Assembly (NCBI RefSeq): GCF_032444005.1
Contig: NC_091285.1
Coordinates: forward strand, 13,206,001 to 13,270,000
Origin: Ranitomeya imitator
Lineage: Eukaryota
Length of the DNA stretch: 64,000 nucleotides
Direction of reading: 5' to 3'
How positions within the stretch are numbered: the first letter of the stretch is position 1; each line of letters starts with the position of its first letter. Made by a program: the position numbers and the translations under genes. The notes beneath the pieces were generated by a model. The model did not search any database. It was not told where the DNA came from and saw only the letters and a list, made by a program, of their open reading frames with translations. Positions 10,141 to 60,411 of this stretch are shown one piece after another.

Positions 10141-10330
10141 TATAATAATAATAATTTTATTTATATAGCGCCAACATATTCCGCAGCGCTTTACAAATTA
10201 TAGAGGGGACTTGTACAGACAATAGACATTACAGCATAACAAAAATCACAGTTCAAAATAGATACCAATAGGAGTGAGGGCCCTGCTGCTCGCAAGCTTA
10301 CATACTAAGAGGAAAAAGGGAGACACGGGA
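10141..10330 (-). mobile_element. L2 3' end
   Basis: (TAA)n then TTTATTTATATAGCGCCAACATATTCCGCAGCGCTTTACA. Confidence 0.8.
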
Positions 10331-10519
10331 GGTGGAGAGCCCGTGTGACCCGTCTGCCCTGCTCTCAAGTCTCCCCATCTAGCCTGTCCTCGTAATGGCT
10401 GTGCCCCTTTCTTCCCTGCTCCCCTGTCTTCCCCTGTCCCCTTGCAGCCCCATCTCCCTGTGCGTCCCTATCTACTCTGCCCTCGTAGTCCCCTTGTATC
10501 CTCTTGTGCCTGTGGTTGT

Positions 10520-42017: not shown

Positions 42018-42158
42018 TACATGGATGAACATAGTACTATATGGTGGGTATACAGCAATGTGTGTGACCTGCACTATAAGGTGGTATACATGACAGATGA
42101 ATATGTACAGATCACAGCAGAGATCAGCGGCGTCAGCTCTTGTGGTGACGGTGTGGGT

Positions 42159-42174
42159 GGCTCTTAGAAGAGCC
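42159..42174 (-). promoter_or_regulatory. Histone 3' stem-loop (H2A)
   Basis: GGCTCT-TCTA-AGAGCC with ACAAGAGCTG downstream. Confidence 0.95.
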
Positions 42175-42208
42175 TTTGGGTTGTGTGGATAGATGGGATC
42201 AGTGTCGC

Positions 42209-43302
<1,094 letters not shown>

Positions 43303-43333
43303 NNNNNTCCGTGCTCTGCACCCACAACCCAAA

Positions 43334-43349
43334 GGCTCTTCTAAGAGCC
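43334..43349 (+). promoter_or_regulatory. Histone 3' stem-loop (H2B) followed by an H2A-type downstream flank
   Basis: GGCTCT-TCTA-AGAGCC then CACCACAAGAGCC, the H2A-type pattern. Confidence 0.93.
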
Positions 43350-44089
43350 ACCCACCGCATCACCACAAGAGCCGATACCACTAATATCTGGTGTGATGTT
43401 CTGGATGTATGGATTGTATAGCCAAGATTCTGTGTAACATTGTGCTGCACATGGGATATATAGTGGATCAGGCAGTGGGTATAATCCAGTCACTATTGGG
43501 TTAGAACCGGCTGTGACTGCCACTTACTGGTCTGGTGTCCATCCAGTCTTGTACCATCCTTTCCACCAACCTCCATGGTTGTAGTGTGTGGTGAGCCACT
43601 GGAAGGTGACCACACAGCATTAGATGAGTATTTGTAGGTCCTGGTGTGAATACAAGTAAAACGGTCTCAAAAATGGGCACCGAAGGGTGTTAATGAAAGG
43701 GTTACATGACTTTGGGCCACACATCAAACCCAAGTCTCCAGCCTGGCCCAAATGGGCTCTGGGCATCAAAGTAGGCAAAGAGCAGATTTTCACAGGTAGT
43801 GTGAGATAAGTGACTCAAAGTCATTTAACCCCTTAAACAGTTACTTATTCAAATGGCCAAAATCGGTAGTTTGCCCACTTTAGATACCACAACAATTCTG
43901 GTGCCCAGAACCCATTTGGACCAGGCTGTACGGAGCTGGGTTGGATGCAGGGCATCACTGTATTCTTAGCGTGAGATCAGTGACCCAAAGACATACTGAT
44001 AGAGAATTTAGATTGTGAGCCCCAACAATGTGTGCGCTGCAGAATGTTAGCGCTATATAAAAATAAAGATGATTAATTATAAAGCGATT

Positions 44090-44500
44090 TAATAATAATA
44101 ATAATAATAATAATAATTTTTATTTATATAGCGCCAACATATTCCGCAGCGCTTTACAAATTATAGAGGGGACTTGTACATACAATAGACATTACAGCAT
44201 AACAGAAATACAGTTCAAAACAGATACCAAGAGGAGTGAGGGCCCTGCTCGTAAGCTTACAAACTATGAGGAAAAGGGGAGACACGAGAGGTGGATGGTA
44301 ACAATTGCTATAGTTATTCGGACCAGCCATAGTGTAAGGCTTGGGTGTTCATGTAAAGCTGCATGAACCAGTTAATTAATTTTTTTTTTTTTTTAATATA
44401 GGCCACACAGGGATCGTTAGGTTAATGCATTGAGGCGGTAGGCCAGTCTGAACAAATGAGTTTTTAGGGCACGCTTAAAACTGTGGGGATTGGGGATTTA
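44090..44500 (-). mobile_element. L2 3' end with (TAA)n tail
   Basis: (AAT)n then TTTATTTATATAGCGCCAACATATTCCGCAGCGCTTTACA; near-identical to 10141-10330. Confidence 0.82.
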
Positions 44501-44844
44501 ACCCTTTGATTAACACCCTTCAGTGCCCATTTTTGTAGCAGTTTTTTCACATCAGGTCACCTCGCTGCAATGTATGTTATTATTGTGATGCTTATTTTTT
44601 GTTAAACCTATTTAAAAAAAAAAAAAACAAGAAAAAAATTGCTGAATAAAAGAAACCAACTCCAGCATCGTTAGGTTGGCAAAGGGGGTATCATCCTGTC
44701 ATTATTTACAGAGACAAAGAACAAAAAAAAAACCATATTGTGATGTGTGACCCTCATAAATAGCAGTATATACCGCCTTATGATGTAATAGTCACATAGT
44801 GAGGAATCTACAAGATCCCCTCAGTCTGTCAGGAGCCGCCGCCA

Positions 44845-45240
44845 TGACACCACGTGTTACTGAGGAGACCAAAGAGCGGGAGAAACTATCAGCCGTTGGG
44901 CGGGAATTTCATGATCAGCGCTCAGCCAATCAGCACTCAGTAAGGCTAAGGCTCCGCCCATAGTCACTTCCCCGCAGACGTTTGGTGTTAACCCTTTAGT
45001 GTCCGATGTTCCCAGCTCCCGCAGATCAGACTGCAGCCATCCGGGCACCGGGCGATCACCAGCCCCTCCCCCAGCAGCAGGAGCCGCGGCTTCTCCTCTC
45101 ATGTGGGCGGAGCACAGAACTGTTGGGGATTTTGAATTTCCCGCATTTTTTCGCGACGACGTTACATCTAGTCACAGACCTGAGTCCTCCCCGGTGACCT
45201 CCTGCTCGGAACAATGGCGGCGTGAGACCGAGAAATCACT
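44845..45240 (-). other. 'Empty H4' element, copy 2
   Basis: Reverse-complement near-copy of 125-545; junction 45110/45111; upstream flank 45700-45960 matches H4 upstream flank 7255-7500. Confidence 0.82.
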
Positions 45241-45261
45241 GGTCAGGGGAGCAAAGGGTTA

Positions 45262-45705
45262 TATCCTGCTGTATACCCCCATATAGTGCTGTATACCCCC
45301 ATATAGTGCTATATACTCTCCATATCCTGCTGTATACCCCCATATAATGCTATATACTCTCCATATCCTGCAATATACCCCCATATAGTGCTATATACTC
45401 TCCATATCCTGCTGTATACCCCCATATAGTGCTATATACTCTCCATATCCTGCTGTATGCCCCCATATAGTGCTATATACTCTCCATATCCTGCTGTATA
45501 CCCCCATATAGTGTTATTATATACTCTCCATATCCTGCTGTATACCCCCATATAGTGCTATATACTCTCCATATCCTGCTGTATACCTCCATACAGTGCT
45601 ATATACCCTTCATATCCTGCTGTATACCCCCATATAGTGCTATATACTCTCCATATCCTGCTGTATACCCCCATATAGTGCTATATACCCTTTATATCTC
45701 CATAC
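45262..45705. repeat. 41-bp minisatellite, about 10 copies
   Basis: ATATAGTGCTATATACTCTCCATATCCTGCTGTATACCCCC units. Confidence 0.93.
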
Positions 45706-46714
45706 TGTGCTTCTCCATTAATGACAATGTGAGGTTCAGACCTAGAAATAGATCAGTGTTTAATTCATCATTGATCAGGAGCCTCCACTGCTCTGGGGGG
45801 TGAAGGGTGCGTAATATCAGGGGAATATAAGCAAGAAATTGCAGAGAGCTCCGATCAGAACCAGCAGACACTGCTGAAAATTAACAGCCCATCTCTGGCT
45901 ACAACCAGCAGAACACTGGAGCAGACGGCACTAGGACCCAGCGCTCTGGGAGAGAATGGGACCCAGTGAGAGGTGACTGAGCAGGAGCCTCCCATCCCAT
46001 GTAACCTAATGGGATCCTCTAACTTCCCAACATCATTATAAAGTGGAGCCGAAACTGGATCCCATATTCTAGATGTTGCTCTATCGCTCATGAGGCCGCA
46101 TACATTGGGATCGCAGGATTTTCTCCTTATACACCCGAAAATCTTGTTTGCCTTTGCAGCTGCTGCCTGACTTTACTGATATAGCGCCAGGATATTCCTC
46201 AGCCCTTTACATACATTACTGCTGTCCCCAATGGGGCTCAATCTAAATTCCCCATCAGTATTGTCTTTGTAAATGTGGGAGGAAATCGGAGAGAGCCACA
46301 CACGGGGGGAACGTACAAACCCCAGGCAGATTATGTTTTGTTCCATTTATTGTGTATGCATCAATAGTGTCACTCCATCTTAGGTGCATTACTCCTCTAT
46401 CAACATTCTTATTTCCCGAGTGTCTCATTCAGTCATCTTCAGATTATTCTGTAATATTGTACTGTGAGGATCAGATTTTAGTCTACTTAGTTTGGAATTC
46501 GCGAATACTGACTAAATCCCATCCACAAGGTCAATAATGAAAGATATTGAATTAGTCCCAACAGATCCTTGTGGTCCCCAATGCTCCCAGTACAGATCCT
46601 TGTGGTCCCCACTCAAACCAGATCACATTTAGGGAATGTTCTATTTACAACACCCACGTCCCCTGTCTTAAGTTCTTTACCCATCTGAATGGTGTCTAGC
46701 CCCAGCTTCTAGAG

Positions 46715-48707
46715 CAGTGGTTCTCAACCTTTCTAATGCTGTGACCCCGCAATACAGTTCCTCATGTTGCGGTGACCCCCAACCCAAAAAATAATTTTGG
46801 TGGCTACTTTAAAACTGTAATTTTATTAGTTATGATTCGGAATGTAAATATCTGATATGCATTATGTATAGAGGTAATACAGAGATCACTGGTGACATTA
46901 TACACAGGACCTCTATATAGTATACAGTGTATAGTGTCAGTGTATAGGTAACACTGACTCACCAGTGACGTCTCTAGGTGAAGTCCTTCATCTTTCATCC
47001 AGCACAGACCGCCATCATTCCTTCCAGCCAGGACTCGTTTCTGCAGGAAATAACACAGTTATCTAGAGCTCCGCTTGCAGAACACATTACTTAATTTTTC
47101 ACAACTTCTACATTACACCACATGAAGATAAAAAGGCAATATAGTGTCACTCTGCACAGTAACAGGACCGCCCCCCCATTTAAAACAGTATACTCAAAAA
47201 ATAAAATAAATACATCACTGCAGTAATAATATCCCTTAATTATCCCCTATTATGCCTATGGTAACACTATTCCCCACCCTGGCCCCGTTTATCTCATTCC
47301 TGGCTCCAGCCATATGTTCTCGCATCCTGCCCTCATGAGTATCCATTCTACTCCATATGATCTCCCCATCCTGCCCCACCAGCCTCCATCGTATCCGTCC
47401 TGCCCCATGATCCAATCCTGCCCCGTGTCTCCAATCATGCCCCGTATCTACATTCTGCCCATGCCTCAAGTCCTGCCCCCAGTGTGTCCAGCATATTACC
47501 CCCATGTTGTCCAGCAATCTGCCCCAGTGTGTCCAGCATATTACCCCAGTGTGTCCAGCATATTACCCCCAGTGTGTCCAGCAATCTGCCCCAGTGTTCA
47601 GCATTGCCCCAGTGTGTCCAGAAGTCTGCCCCAGGGTCTCCAGCATTGCCTCAATGTGTCCAGAAATCTGCCAAAGGGTCTCCAGTATTGCCCCAGTGTG
47701 TCCAGCAATCTGCCCCATAGTCTCCTGTATTGCCCCAGTGTGTCCAGCAATCTGCCCCATGGTCTCCAGTATTGCCCCAGTGTGTCCAGCATTCTGCCCC
47801 ATGGTCTCCTGTATTGCCCCAGTGTGTCCAGCATTCTGCCCCATGGTCTCCTGTATTGCCCGTGTGTCCAGCAATCTGCCCCATAGTCTCCTGTATTGCC
47901 CCAGTGTCCAGCAATCTGCCCCATGGTCTCCTGTATTGCCCCAGTGTGTCCAGCATTCTGCCACATGGTCTCCTGTATTGCCCCAGTGTGTCCAGCAATC
48001 TGCCCCATGGTCTCCAGTATTGCCCCAGTGTGTCCAGCAATCTGCCCCATAGTAGTCTGCTGTATTGCCCCAGTGTGTCCAGCAATCTGCCCCATGGTCT
48101 CCTGTATTGCCCCAGTGTGTCCAGCAATCTGCCCCATGGTCTCCAGCATTGCCCCAGTGTGTCCAGCAATCTGCCCCATAGTTGTCTCCTGTATTGCCCC
48201 AGTGTGTCCAGCAATCTGCCCCATGGTCTCCTGTATTGCCCCAGTGTGTCCAGCAAACTGCCCCGTGGTCTCCAGTATTGCCCCAGTGTGTCCAGCATTG
48301 CCCCCAGACAGTCAGACATAGAAAAAAAAAAAAAAAAAAAGTAAAATCCTCACCTCTCCCGTTCCTAGCGCAGGTCCGGTGCAGCCAGTCAGCGTCTCTC
48401 CGGCTCTGCGACGCTCAGGACAGAGAGGCAGAGCGGCGCGCACAGTAGTGACGTCATCGCGCCCTCTGCTCTGAGACGTCGCAGAGTCAGAGGACGCTGC
48501 AGCTGCCGGCGCCGCAGGAACCAATAGATGTGAGTATTAGAGCGGGGGGCGGGGCCCGGGGGTAGGGGGAGCTGGCCCTGGTCGTGGCGGCGGACGGCGC
48601 CGCCCGAAGATTTAAAGGGGCGTCTTTTTTTTTTTCTCCCCCCTTCCTACGCCACTGGTGGCGACCCCTGTGCTTTGGTCGTTCGACCCCCAGGTTGAGA
48701 ACCACTG
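46715..48707. mobile_element. hAT-Charlie non-autonomous element
   Basis: TIR CAGTGGTTCTCAACCT; perfect TSD TTCTAGAG (46707-46714, 48708-48715); the empty paralogous site TTCTGGAG lies near 58321. Confidence 0.93.
47480..48300. repeat. ~42-bp minisatellite inside the Charlie element
   Basis: TGTATTGCCCCAGTGTGTCCAGCAATCTGCCCCATGGTCTCC units. Confidence 0.93.
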
Positions 48708-48927
48708 TTCTAGAGCATCTGTACAAGACTCATGAGGTTCATTATCAGGCCATATACATCACATCTGCCACATGACCAATATCCAGATGGCACTTACCTG
48801 GATTAGGCACCAGTGACCAGACTGGTGAGCAACATTTTTTTGCAGAGTTTTTACAGGTAATATCTGATAAGGTCAGTGCAGCAGGACACAGACGAGCAGC
48901 CACAGCTCCGATGTAGACGGGGTGGGT

Positions 48928-48943
48928 GGCTCTTAGAAGAGCC
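48928..48943 (-). promoter_or_regulatory. Histone 3' stem-loop (H2B)
   Basis: GGCTCT-TCTA-AGAGCC. Confidence 0.95.
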
Positions 48944-48974
48944 TTTGGGTTGTGGGTGCAGAGCACTGAGCAGA

Positions 48975-50096
<1,122 letters not shown>

Positions 50097-55920: not shown

Positions 55921-56969
55921 AACTACAATGGTGCTGATGGAATCGGTGGGGAACTCGGACACTGATCACACAGCTCTGCCGGGACAAGGTGGTGGCTATG
56001 AAATAAAGCCTTTGTGGGAGAAGGACGGGGCAGCTGCTGCTTATTTCTTAGGTGAGGCTCCTTGTCTGTATCACAGCTCCATATAGTGGTATATATCATA
56101 TAGCTGCACATATCTCCATATAGTGCTCTATCAGTCCATATAGTGCTCTGAACCTCAGTATTGTGCTATATACCAACATATAGTTCTGTATACGTCCGTG
56201 TAGTGTTTTATACTCTCCACATTGTGCCGTATACATACGTATAGTGCTGAAACCCTCCATATAGTGCTAGATACTGATGTGTACATCAAAATAGTGTTTT
56301 TCCCACATATAGAACGAAAAACCATCGAGGCAGCAGCTATGTACGATAACATCCAAATTTATTGTAGAAAATTGTATTAAAAGTGCCTGACAATTCCAGT
56401 GTGACTGAGACCCAAGATAAGTGACCTGACTGAGGCCCCGAAGAGCTGGAAGGCGCAGGACTCGGTCACACTGGATCTGTCGCGCACTTCTCATTCATCT
56501 TTCCATAATACATGTGGATGTTATCGTACATACTGTACCTCCGGCCTCGCTGGATTTTCGTTCCTCTGTTTCGCCTCTGCTGGTTCCAGGCTTCTCCGTG
56601 CTGACACTCGGGTGAGCGGACTCTCTCCCATTCCCCCTTCTCTGTGACTATGTCCACATATAGTGAAGAATATCACTATATACCCTGGAAATAGCGCTGT
56701 GTCCGCCCTCAGCATTAATAGTGTGCTATATATGGCCATATAGTGCTGAATACCTCATCTATGGTGCTATATATCGCCAGATAGTGTCACACCCCATATA
56801 ATGCCTCATACACCCCATATAGTGCTGTGTGCCAGGCTATAATGCCTCATACACTGCATATCGTGCTGTATTCCTCCATGTGAAGCGGTCTATGCCCAAA
56901 TAGTACCATACACCCTCCATATAGCGCTGTATACGGCCATATATCATTTCCCTCCATATAGCGCTCTGC

Positions 56970-57390
56970 ACCACGTGTTACTGAGGAGAACAAAGAGCGG
57001 GAGAAACTATCAGCCGTTGGGCGGGAATTTCATATTCAGTGCTCAGCCAATCAGCACTCAGTAGGGCTATGGCTCCGCCCACAGGGTCACTTCCCCGCAG
57101 ACACGTGGTGTTCACCCTTTAGTGCCCGATGTTTCCAGCTCCCGCAGAGCAGACTGCAGCCATCCGGGCACCGGGCGATCACCAGCCCCTCCCCCAGCAG
57201 CAGGAGCCGCGGCTTCTCCTCACATGTGGGCGGAGCACAGAACTGTTGGGGATTTTGAATTTCCCGCACTTTTTCCTGTCATTTTCCCGCGTTTATCACG
57301 AGGACGTTACATCTAGTCACAGCCCTGAGTCCTCCCCGGTGACCTCCTGCTCAGAACAATGGCGGCGGGAGACTGATAAATCACAGATGC
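56970..57390 (-). other. 'Empty H4' element, copy 3
   Basis: Reverse-complement near-copy of 125-545; junction 57233/57234. Confidence 0.82.
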
Positions 57391-58582
57391 ACATAGTTCT
57401 GTATACCCCATATCCTACTGTATACCCCAATATATTGCCGTATAGCCTCCATATCTTGCTGTATACCCCTATATTGTGCTGTATCTCCCCCTTTATACCC
57501 CCATATAGTGCTGTATAAATCCATATTATACCCCTGTATAGCGCTATACACCCTCCTGTGCTTTGCTCTTGTAGCTCCGGCTGCGATAAACCAGTGGGAT
57601 TCAGACCCAGAAATAGATCAGTGATTGTCAGTTTCTCATTGATCAGGAGCCTCTGGTCCGGGGAGTGACCGCTGCGTTATTTCATTAGAACATTTTGAAC
57701 AGAACAATGAGAAACTGCTGAAAATATCGCTAAGCGCTGAAAGAGTTAACAGCCCATCTGCGCCTATTACCAGGAGACCACTGGAGTCTGGCGGCACTAG
57801 GACCCAGCGCTCTGGGATCAGTGGAAGGTGACAGCGGGAGGTGTTGCCGCTTTTCTTAATATTTGATTTTTATAATGTGCAACAAACTGGATTCCGTATT
57901 GTAGATGTTTCCCCTCTATAAATAGGGCCGGGTCCTCCCTCTGTGCTCCTGGGCGCCTTGTGTTACTCCTCTATTGTACTTGTCTATATTCGCCCCTTTC
58001 ATGTGTAAAGCGCCATGGAATAAATGCGGCTATAGAAATGTATAATAATAATAATGGCATTGTAATATCAAGGTCAGTTTATTATCCCGCATAGTGGTGT
58101 CAATAGCAAAGGCTGACACTTTACTCAGTCCCATATACAAGGCCATTGTTGGTTATAAAAAAAAAAAATTGGTCCCAACATTAACTTGGGTCCCCACTGC
58201 TCCCACTACAGATCCTTGCAGTCCCCACTCCATATTGCATTTAATGTTCTATTTACACCAGTTTCCTTTCTTAGCCAGTTCTTCCATCTGCATATAGTGT
58301 ATATATTCTATATTCCCAGGTTCTGGAGCGCCGGTTTAAGGCTGTTGTGTGGTTCAGTATTATCAGTCCAGATATCACATTGGCCGCATTACAAATATCC
58401 AGATTGGCACTTACCTTTTCCTAGACACCCAACATGTGGGTTGAGACATTTTTCAGGAATCTATACTGATGGTTGGTAATTAAATTACTTTCCAAAACAT
58501 TTTGCAAATCATCCCTTTCAATGCCGGTCAGTGCAGCAGGACACAGACGAGCAGCCACAGCTCTGATGTAGACGGGGTGGGT

Positions 58583-59784: not shown

Positions 59785-59800
59785 GGCTCTTCTAAGAGCC
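59785..59800 (+). promoter_or_regulatory. Histone 3' stem-loop (H2A)
   Basis: GGCTCT-TCTA-AGAGCC. Confidence 0.95.
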
Positions 59801-60411
59801 ACCCACACCGTCACCACAAGAGCTGACGCCGCTGATCTCTGCTGTGATGTTCTGTGCATACAGATCTGTTATTTGCCTGACATTCTGTATAACATTAGAG
59901 TAAACAAGAGCTGTAGTAGCACCCGGCAGTGGGTATAATCCTGTCACTATTGGGTTGGCACAGTGGGACTGATGATGGTTTATAATCTGCTGTGACTGGC
60001 ACTTACTGGTCTGGTATCAGGTCTTACACCCTCCTCTCCCCCAACCTCCAGGTCCTGTAGTCCAAAGTGTGAGTAATAAACCTGCAGTAAGGTGACCACA
60101 GGTTCATATTTATGACCTGTGCTGGGCACCTTGCATTAGATGAGTATTGTGGGCAGATGCTGCTCCTGGTGGCAGCACTAGTGCACTGCAGTATGACCCT
60201 ATGTGCTGCCACATGTGATGTGAGGACTGTGCATTAACTGGTGTGTATGGGGGGGGGGGGAGGGGGATATCCAAATATATACACACCCCATATTGTGTTG
60301 TATGCCACCATGTAGTGTGATTGCGATGTACTTCCTATATAGTGCTGAATACAGTCATATAGCTCTAAAAGATGTTGTTTCCCTTCATTTAGCGCTGTGC
60401 ACCACTTATTA

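What the first reader, a model, noticed from the sequence alone, without database searches (positions are those of the whole stretch)
43308..43660. H2B stem-loop joined to an H2A 3' flank at the point where the array reverses
Seen: H2A and H2B genes share an identical 33-nt block (CACAACCCAAAGGCTCTTCTAAGAGCCACCCAC). At 43.3 kb the sequence before the block is H2B-type (TCCGTGCTCTGCACC). After it, the sequence is H2A-type (CACCACAAGAGC...GGCAGTGGGTATAATCC.GTCACTATTGGGTT...CACTTACTGGTCTGG, matching 59800-60150), not the CCGTCTACATCAGAGCTG flank of other H2Bs. Everything to the left is a plus-oriented array and everything to the right is minus-oriented. The junction lies in called sequence, 3' of an exact-length N-mask. 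Inference: ectopic recombination between the H2A and H2B processing signals created the inversion, so the RNA 3'-processing element doubles as a rearrangement hotspot and swaps HDEs between classes.
Basis: partly seen in the sequence, partly recalled or inferred. Interest (0 to 1): 0.75.

Follow-up and report, generated by a model that had tools for sequence, protein, structure and literature searches.

The report
H2B gene ending in H2A flank
In a poison-frog histone cluster, one H2B gene runs straight from its RNA hairpin into the downstream DNA of an H2A gene, where the gene array flips direction; this is a real, old DNA exchange at the shared hairpin signal, but a single case and not a proven hotspot.

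Summary
The window is Ranitomeya imitator (aRanImi1) histone DNA. The H2B gene at 42922-43302 has an H2B-type 3'UTR, the 33-nt stem-loop block shared by all H2A and H2B genes, and then an H2A-type HDE and flank (43356-43632). The array orientation switches exactly there.

It is not an assembly error. An independent R. imitator assembly (R_imi_1.0) has the same junction. The orthologous locus in a second frog species (GCA_051348905.1) has the same H2A-derived flank behind the same H2B gene. The exchange is therefore older than that species split. In the second species the B-to-A change lies 17 nt further on, at the HDE core, so gene conversion has moved the boundary.

In 91 H2A/H2B stem-loop records (some seen twice or orthologous), this locus is the only cross-class chimera. 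No reciprocal H2A-body/H2B-flank junction was found. Three other orientation switches have ordinary flanks.

So "exchange inside the 3' processing signal" is supported. "It created the inversion" and "hotspot" are not. My best reading is a deletion or unequal exchange between directly oriented H2B and H2A stem-loops beside an existing switch. The swapped HDE looks usable. Interest is modest.

The parts
42153..42185 (-). 33-nt stem-loop block of the H2A gene of the central pair, followed leftwards by a normal H2A-type HDE and flank
42212..42595 (-). H2A coding sequence (128 aa) of the central divergent pair. The orthologous gene in GCA_051348905.1 encodes the identical protein.
42922..43302 (+). 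H2B coding sequence. Positions 43154-43307 are masked and I did not read them anywhere. Length and spacing are as in the other H2B genes.
   Evidence: gene callers give 126 aa at this place in L011, L027 and L001
43308..43322 (+). Last 15 nt of the 3'UTR, H2B type
43323..43355 (+). 33-nt block shared by H2A and H2B (16-nt stem-loop at 43334-43349). Rfam Histone3 scores 32.5 bits here, as for the other genes.
43323..43361 (+). Crossover interval in R. imitator: the last H2B-specific base is 43322 and the first H2A-specific bases are 43362-43363. Base 43356 is C as in H2B, but a few true H2A genes also have C there.
43362..43376 (+). H2A-type HDE with T-to-C at 43373 (AAGAGCCG)
43356..43632 (+). 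H2A-derived 3' flank in right-array orientation. Single-copy by k-mer depth. It is 91% identical to the orthologous flank in L033 and 69-83% identical to paralogous H2A flanks.
43633..44607 (.). High-copy transposon-derived stretch. Positions 44039-44494 are an insertion absent from R_imi_1.0 and from the second species.
44848..45956 (+). Element E' (H4-flank relic with tandem repeats) in right-array orientation, collinear with 56969-57817
48922..49355 (-). Next gene to the right: H2B on the minus strand with a normal H2B-type HDE. It is the first ordinary member of the right-hand array.

Best explanation
This is a real and old chimeric histone 3' end. An ectopic (non-allelic) exchange joined the body and hairpin of an H2B gene of a plus-oriented array to the downstream sequence of an H2A gene of a minus-oriented array. 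The two partners share no homology except their 3' processing signal, and the crossover lies inside that signal: in the 33-nt stem-loop block in R. imitator, and at the HDE core AGAGC in the other species.

The most likely form of the event is a deletion or unequal exchange between two directly oriented stem-loops. These were H2B(+) of the central pair and H2A(+) of a neighbouring, already inverted H2B-/H2A+ pair. The event removed the H2B flank, the original switch point and that neighbouring pair. On this reading the stem-loop trimmed an existing array boundary and did not create the inversion.

Later, gene conversion among H2B paralogs probably rewrote the 17 nt up to the HDE core back to H2B type in the second species.

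Shown: the chimera, its reality, its age, and its uniqueness in the sample. Inferred: deletion rather than inversion, and the direction of the later conversion.
For: Chimera.

Reality. R_imi_1.0 (GCA_958301615.1, a separate R. imitator assembly) is collinear with window 29.9-53.7 kb at 98.2-99.5% with indels, and carries the same junction (L001:10387-10641, 99.6%). A k=31 unitig from public reads covers 43327-43697 with no difference, at single-copy depth.

Age. L033 (GCA_051348905.1) is collinear with window 43.55-57.5 kb at 80-95%. It has the same order: H2A-/H2B+, flank, H2B-/H2A+, H3-. Its flank is the reciprocal best match of the window's flank (91%) and shares the AGAGC-C change.

Crossover-type junction rather than a patch. 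Everything from 43356 to the next pair is ordinary right-array sequence (H2A flank, then E about 1 kb on), as in units L003 and L004.

No reciprocal product. In 91 stem-loop records only this locus is cross-class, and none of about 47 H2A stem-loops has a B-type HDE or distal flank. The right array ends with an H2A+ gene carrying its own flank, plus an H4 pseudogene. The A-to-A switch of GCA_051348905.1 is concordant.

Undeleted template. H2A-/H2B+, 2-3 kb, H2B-/H2A+, H2A flank exists at -72.6 to -67.4 kb on the same chromosome and in L008. There the H2B(+) and H2A(+) stem-loops are direct repeats 3-4 kb apart.
Against: No direct ancestor was seen. The undeleted modules are paralogous, and their flanks are not specially close to the junction flank (66-75%).

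About 50 kb of aRanImi1 (-62 to -12.5 kb) and the left arm in the second species were not sampled. Protein-based look-ups are not exhaustive, so a reciprocal junction could have been missed or lost later.

The junction position differs between the two species, so the original crossover point (stem-loop block or HDE core) is inferred only. The basis is that the 17 nt after the block in R. imitator carry 3 substitutions, the same decay as the rest of the flank.

The public contigs cannot bridge the 33-mer.
Confidence: 0.55

Rival explanations
1. Recombination between the inverted stem-loop blocks of an H2B(+) gene and an H2A(-) gene inverted everything in between and so created the orientation switch.
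For: In a uniform array of divergent pairs, the H2B and H2A stem-loops are inverted 33-nt repeats, and the predicted product is exactly H2B body + hairpin + H2A flank followed by inverted units. The junction coincides with the switch point to within 39 nt.
Against: The reciprocal H2A-body/H2B-flank junction was not found in any of these places: the about 71 kb of right array up to its end, the A-to-A switch of the second species, or anywhere among about 47 H2A stem-loops. Other switches in the same clusters have concordant flanks, so inversions here arise without stem-loop crossovers. A 33-bp homology is short for an inversion of 70 kb or more.
Confidence: 0.2
2. Fold-back or template-switch inverted duplication. 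After a break right of the pair, the H2B stem-loop annealed to the pair's own H2A stem-loop on the same strand. Synthesis then copied the left arm backwards, leaving the 1.17-kb pair as the unduplicated spacer.
For: The anatomy fits the published fold-back picture: a spacer bounded by short inverted sequences between inverted arms (PMC3907307; PMC10164571). The pair is flanked on both sides by H2A-type flanks in mirror orientation. Gene order outward is mirror-like: H4 or E', then pair, H3, E.
Against: The right flank should be a copy of the pair's own left flank. In fact they share only the 38-42 nt conserved in all H2A genes, while the right flank aligns for 120-250 nt with other H2A flanks. 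No mirrored E lies next to the left flank. Mirror-position units are no more alike than units elsewhere.
Confidence: 0.1
3. A gene-conversion patch. An H2A 3' region overwrote the H2B flank without any crossover, and the real orientation switch lies somewhere in 43.6-44.8 kb by coincidence.
For: Conversion clearly acts here: the B-to-A boundary differs by 17 nt between the two species, and pairs are homogenised to 92-96%.
Against: There is no return to H2B-type or left-array sequence after the H2A-type stretch. The flank, the 240 unique bases and E' are contiguous right-array sequence in both species. This model needs two independent events side by side.
Confidence: 0.08
4. Assembly mis-join at the 33-mer.
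For: Short-read contigs break inside the block (unitig starts at 43327), so they cannot prove the link.
Against: The same junction is present in a second R. imitator assembly built from another data set, with 1-2% divergence and indels around it. The same chimeric arrangement is present at the orthologous locus of another species. H2A and H2B bodies share nothing that could mislead an overlap assembler. The mask next to the junction is exact-length, not a gap.
Confidence: 0.02
5. H2A-like flanks are native to an H2B subfamily.
For: H2B genes of the other (H1-H3-H4-H2A-H2B type) clusters have an HDE with AAGAGC that is nearer to the H2A type.
Against: Those genes have a different 3'UTR and a different flank. 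The junction flank matches H2A flanks of the pair-type cluster over 120-250 nt. All other pair-type H2B genes sampled (about 40) have the B-type flank.
Confidence: 0.02

Closest known systems
Deletion or unequal crossing-over between short dispersed direct repeats (NAHR, single-strand annealing) in tandem multigene clusters
   Same: One chimeric junction whose two sides belong to different repeat copies; the crossover lies inside the only shared sequence; no reciprocal product on the same chromosome.
   Different: The shared sequence is only 33 nt. It is not a duplicated segment but an RNA-processing signal kept identical in two unrelated gene classes by selection (the binding site of the stem-loop binding protein). 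The partners are an H2B and an H2A gene of oppositely oriented arrays.
Fold-back inverted duplications with a spacer bounded by short inverted repeats (Hermetz et al. 2014, PMC3907307; Ait Saada et al. 2023, PMC10164571)
   Same: A 1.17-kb unduplicated centre (the H2A-H2B pair) bounded by short inverted repeats, with oppositely oriented arrays on both sides.
   Different: The arms next to the centre are not copies of each other. The structure is ancient and fixed, not a fresh pathological rearrangement.
Concerted evolution and gene conversion of histone genes (established knowledge of histone multigene families; not re-read here)
   Same: Pairs are homogenised up to 33-50 nt past each stem-loop. 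The boundary of the chimera moved by 17 nt between species, as a conversion tract ending in the HDE core would do.
   Different: Here sequence of one histone class (H2A) sits behind a gene of another class (H2B). I found no description of such a cross-class 3' end in the searchable library. My recollection that inverted duplications were described in chicken histone clusters in 1985 could not be checked, because the paper is not held.
Satellites grown from histone 3' processing signals in this same genome
   Same: Another kind of DNA instability that starts at the stem-loop/HDE region of histone genes in R. imitator.
   Different: Those are tandem amplifications within one gene's signal. This is an exchange between two genes' signals.

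Membership tests
Replication-dependent histone 3' processing signal (stem-loop + HDE) | 16-nt stem-loop (6-bp stem, 4-nt loop) with CCAAA and ACCCA flanks | tested here: met
   43334-43349 is identical to the other 9 H2A/H2B/H4 stem-loops. Rfam Histone3 scores 32.5 bits against 31.1-33.6 for the neighbours. All but two copies in the window fall just under the gathering score of 34, because the loop is UCUA in this genome.
Replication-dependent histone 3' processing signal (stem-loop + HDE) | Purine-rich HDE at the usual distance downstream, able to pair with U7 snRNA | tested here: inconclusive
   The H2A-type HDE is at the same spacing as in H2A genes. Its one change (AAGAGCCG) is the native HDE of several intact H2A genes of the other cluster type, and H3 genes have GAGCC. 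No U7 sequence of this frog and no RNA data were available.
Inversion by recombination between inverted repeats | Inverted copies of the repeat at both breakpoints | tested here: inconclusive
   One breakpoint is in the block. The other end was not identified.
Inversion by recombination between inverted repeats | Reciprocal chimeric junction (H2A body with H2B flank) | tested here: not met
   None among about 47 H2A stem-loop records, including array ends and other switches. Sampling was incomplete: a 50-kb gap remains.
Fold-back inverted duplication | Spacer bounded by short inverted sequences | tested here: met
   The 33-nt blocks at 42153-42185 (-) and 43323-43355 (+) bound the 1.17-kb pair.
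Fold-back inverted duplication | Arms adjacent to the spacer are inverted copies of each other | tested here: not met
   Only the 38-42 nt common to all H2A flanks align.
Deletion / unequal exchange between direct repeats | Single chimeric junction with the crossover inside the shared repeat and no reciprocal on the chromosome | tested here: met
Deletion / unequal exchange between direct repeats | Existence of the undeleted arrangement with the two repeats in direct orientation | tested here: inconclusive
   Paralogous modules with this arrangement exist (aRanImi1 -72.6 to -67.4 kb; L008). No orthologous undeleted state was found.

The most novel reading that the evidence does not exclude
The conserved sub-elements of the histone 3' processing signal (the stem-loop block and the HDE core) act repeatedly as the exchange points for DNA transfer between different histone classes. 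HDEs and downstream flanks would then be shuffled among H2A and H2B genes over evolutionary time and re-homogenised by conversion. The two different B-to-A boundaries in the two species, both inside this signal, would be the first trace of that process.
Probability: 0.15. Interest if true: 0.6.

Novelty: new member of a known kind. Interest (0 to 1): 0.35.

Why it matters
It shows that a short RNA-processing signal, kept identical in unrelated genes by selection, can serve as the only homology for a DNA exchange between them. It also shows that an H2B gene can apparently live for a long time, across a species split, with an H2A-type U7-binding element. That bears on how interchangeable HDEs are, and on how the very large, unstable histone clusters of frogs are remodelled. 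It does not show a general mechanism: this is one locus.

Tried and rejected
(1) Read support. The only runs served were k=31 contigs. As expected they break inside the 33-mer (unitig 43327-43697), so they confirm the flank and its copy number but not the link. I started the stretch at 43308 so that no read letters would be laid over the mask.

(2) The base C at 43356 as a marker of H2B origin. Dropped, because true H2A genes (for example L006:16514) also have C there.

(3) Element E as a second stem-loop breakpoint. Its H4 deletion runs from about 7810 to about 8454 in H4-locus terms, not at the stem-loop.

(4) In-place flip of the pair by its own two stem-loops. Rejected, because the H2A side keeps an H2A-type flank.

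(5) Orthology of L008 to the junction. Rejected; the matches are at paralog level only.

(6) Fetching the left arm of the second species and the -62 to -12.5 kb gap. Look-ups by H2A variants returned other places.

(7) H3 and H4 proteins were not used as queries, because I expect them to be identical to the human proteins and so to bring in human contigs.

(8) Literature. No paper was found on stem-loop-mediated rearrangement or cross-class histone 3' ends. A 1985 chicken paper that I recall could not be opened.

(9) Masked letters. L011 and L027 (the window's own genome) and L001 contain the letters under the mask. I blanked those stretches in the database used from then on. One script also passed the upstream stretch to a blastx class call without printing it. 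I never printed them or used them to fill the mask.

Full report
WHAT THE WINDOW IS. The window holds 12 replication-dependent histone genes, each with one stem-loop. Two fetched loci are 100% identical to it. They place it on CM064362.1 of GCA_032444005.1 (window coordinate + 13,206,000), which papers name aRanImi1, Ranitomeya imitator. H2A and H2B form divergent pairs. On the left of 43.3 kb the genes read H3+, H2A-/H2B+, H4+, then about 33 kb of transposon-rich DNA, then H2A-/H2B+. On the right they read H2B-/H2A+, H3-, H2B-/H2A+, H4-.

THE OBSERVATION.
- The 33-nt block is present 8 times without a mismatch, once behind every H2A and H2B gene.
- Most of the block is the binding site of the stem-loop binding protein: five bases, the 16-nt hairpin, then ACCCA. 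Selection alone can therefore explain its identity in two gene classes (established knowledge; H3 and H4 have close variants).
- At 43308-43322 the sequence is the H2B 3'UTR. After the block it is H2A type. Positions 43360-43397 match all four H2A flanks at 82-87% and match no H2B flank. Positions 43323-43585 align with the flank of the H2A gene at 59.8 kb (71%, E 2e-35).
- The mask to the left is exact-length: the ATG-to-block distance is 401 nt in all four H2B genes. It is not a scaffold gap.
- The crossover interval is 43323-43361.

IS IT REAL?
- Public runs were available only as k=31 contigs. One unitig covers 43327-43697 with no difference at single-copy depth (12.7 and 19.4, like a unique piece at 44.5 kb). 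It starts inside the block, so it cannot link the two sides.
- The decisive evidence came from other assemblies. Contig CAUEEQ010014342.1 of GCA_958301615.1 is R_imi_1.0, a separate R. imitator assembly. It is collinear with window 29.9-53.7 kb and 55-64 kb at 98.2-99.5% with indels. For example, it lacks window 44039-44494.
- That contig carries the same H2B-type 3'UTR, block and H2A-type flank, with 1 difference in 255 nt.
- An overlap assembler has nothing but 33 nt to confuse between an H2B and an H2A gene. I put an artefact at about 2%.

A SECOND SPECIES.
- Locus L033 of GCA_051348905.1 (species name not found; spacer identity 80-91%) is collinear with window 43.55-57.5 kb. It has the same order: H2A-/H2B+, flank, H2B-/H2A+, H3-.
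- Its H2A protein is identical to that of the window's central pair.
- Behind its H2B hairpin lies the same H2A-derived flank. It is 91% identical to the window's flank and is its reciprocal best match. It is 82% identical to the H2A flank at 59.8 kb, and it even keeps a 25-nt piece that R. imitator has lost.
- The exchange therefore predates the split of the two species.
- One difference is instructive. In L033 the first 17 nt after the block are pure H2B type, up to the HDE core AGAGC, and the H2A-type sequence starts after that core. Both species share the C that follows AGAGC.
- Either the original crossover was in the block and H2B paralogs later converted the HDE back in L033, or it was in the HDE core and an H2A gene converted R. 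imitator.
- I favour the first. The 17 nt in R. imitator carry 3 substitutions against the H2A consensus, the same decay as the rest of the flank, while L033's 17 nt are identical to the H2B consensus. This is an inference.

HOW COMMON?
- I classified the 3'UTR, HDE and distal flank of 91 H2A/H2B stem-loop records from pair-type clusters of three assemblies plus a fourth genome. Some are redundant or orthologous.
- 41 are A-A-A and 37 are B-B-B. Ten have small deletions or variant motifs that look concordant by eye, or a truncated flank.
- The only cross-class cases are this locus: twice in R. imitator and once, as B-B-A, in L033.
- No H2A gene has an H2B-type HDE or flank. H2A-type flanks are thus not a property of an H2B subfamily, and the element is not shown to be a hotspot.

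ORIENTATION SWITCHES AND THE MISSING RECIPROCAL.
- The clusters switch orientation often. There is an H2B+/H2B- switch at -71.4/-68.5 kb on the same chromosome, an H2B+/H2B- switch at 675.555-675.557 Mb in GCA_051348905.1, and an H2A+/H2A- switch at 675.505-675.512 Mb there. All have ordinary flanks.
- The right-hand array runs on in the same orientation for about 71 kb in R_imi_1.0. It ends with an H2A+ gene that has its own flank and a decayed H4 copy, followed by at least 8 kb without histone genes.
- An inversion between two stem-loops must leave an H2A gene with an H2B flank at its other end. I did not find one at either candidate end. About 50 kb of aRanImi1 and the left arm of the second species remain unsampled.

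MECHANISM.
- Every reading that fits the data places the crossover in the 3' processing signal. They differ in the type of event.
- An in-place flip of the pair is excluded, because the H2A side keeps its own flank.
- A fold-back copy of the left arm is not supported, because the two inner flanks share only the 38-42 nt common to all H2A genes.
- A conversion patch is unlikely, because everything from 43356 to the next pair is contiguous right-array sequence in both species. The order H2A flank, about 1 kb, then E is the same as in units L003 and L004.
- That leaves inversion, which needs the unseen reciprocal, or a deletion or unequal exchange between the directly oriented stem-loops of H2B(+) and of the H2A(+) gene of an adjacent, already inverted pair.
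- The undeleted arrangement exists as paralogous modules at -72.6 to -67.4 kb and in L008, with the two stem-loops 3-4 kb apart.
- I rate deletion beside an existing switch at about 0.55, inversion at 0.2 and the remaining readings lower.

FUNCTION.
- The hairpin region scores like its neighbours (32.5 bits).
- The borrowed HDE is at the H2A spacing. Its T-to-C change gives AAGAGCCG, which is the normal HDE of intact H2A genes in the other cluster type, and H3 genes use GAGCC.
- The gene is called as a full 126-aa H2B in three assemblies.
- It probably works, but coding regions are homogenised by conversion, so intactness is weak evidence. No RNA data were available.

COMPARISON WITH WHAT IS KNOWN. 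The event belongs to ordinary ectopic recombination in multigene clusters. What is unusual is that the sole homology is an RNA-processing signal shared by two unrelated genes, and that the product is a cross-class 3' end kept across species. I found no report of this. The fold-back literature gives the nearest anatomical parallel.

LIMITS. The masked bases 43154-43307 were left alone, in the window and in the loci that hold the same DNA. The name of the second species, the state in outgroups and spanning long reads are missing.

Noticed in passing
window 44039-44494: A transposon-like insertion present in aRanImi1 but absent from R_imi_1.0 and from the orthologous locus of the second species. 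A 99.6% identical copy of part of it lies about 70.2 kb left of the window, and a 93% copy at 10142-10336. It is a young, possibly polymorphic insertion.
   Followed up: partly
L008:2860-2920 (minus strand) and L008:3120-3330: An H2A 3'-end fragment whose stem-loop was removed by a clean 30-nt deletion between two CAC triplets. It is followed by the usual H2A flank. About 200 nt upstream lie an H2B-type HDE fragment without a hairpin and a run of TTAGGG-like repeats.
   Followed up: partly
L009:2587; L038 near 3394 (aRanImi1, 95.2 kb left of the window); L035 (GCA_051348905.1 675211816); L039 (R_imi_1.0 contig B 178870): Orphan H2A or H2B 3' ends: hairpin plus HDE without a gene body. In one, only about 10 nt of the H2B 3'UTR is kept. 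They show breakpoints just upstream of the hairpin, but my scan could only find fragments that keep a hairpin.
   Followed up: no
aRanImi1 CM064362.1, 71.4-68.5 kb left of the window; GCA_051348905.1 675.505-675.512 and 675.555-675.557 Mb: Further orientation switches of the H2A/H2B pair array (tail-to-tail H2B/H2B and H2A/H2A), all with ordinary flanks. In GCA_051348905.1 a segment of about 43 kb lies inverted between two of them.
   Followed up: partly
window, all 12 stem-loops: The hairpin loop is UCUA in the H2A, H2B and H4 genes (UCUG or UCUC in H3). As a result, most copies score just below Rfam's gathering threshold for Histone3 (31-34 bits against 34).
   Followed up: yes
window 44848-45956, 5-1382, 56135-57817: Element E (noted earlier as an empty H4 slot). 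The H4-derived flanks are separated by about 130 nt or more of other sequence plus a tandem repeat family, and the missing part runs from the H4 promoter to about 140 nt past the H4 hairpin. Units further right in the array have both E and an intact H4.
   Followed up: partly
L012:9278, L013:7772, L016:1744: H2B genes of the other cluster type are followed by repeated copies of a 24-nt unit containing their HDE. This agrees with earlier notes on minisatellites grown from the H2B signal.
   Followed up: no
window 43433-43582: A 152-nt contig of a run labelled as a different organism (coded B) matches with no difference. This is either a very close relative or a labelling matter.
   Followed up: no
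window 45261-45698 and 47386-48304: Two tandem-repeat arrays in the spacer. The first belongs to a family also found near other H2A flanks and in E. The second gives long spurious ORFs.
   Followed up: no
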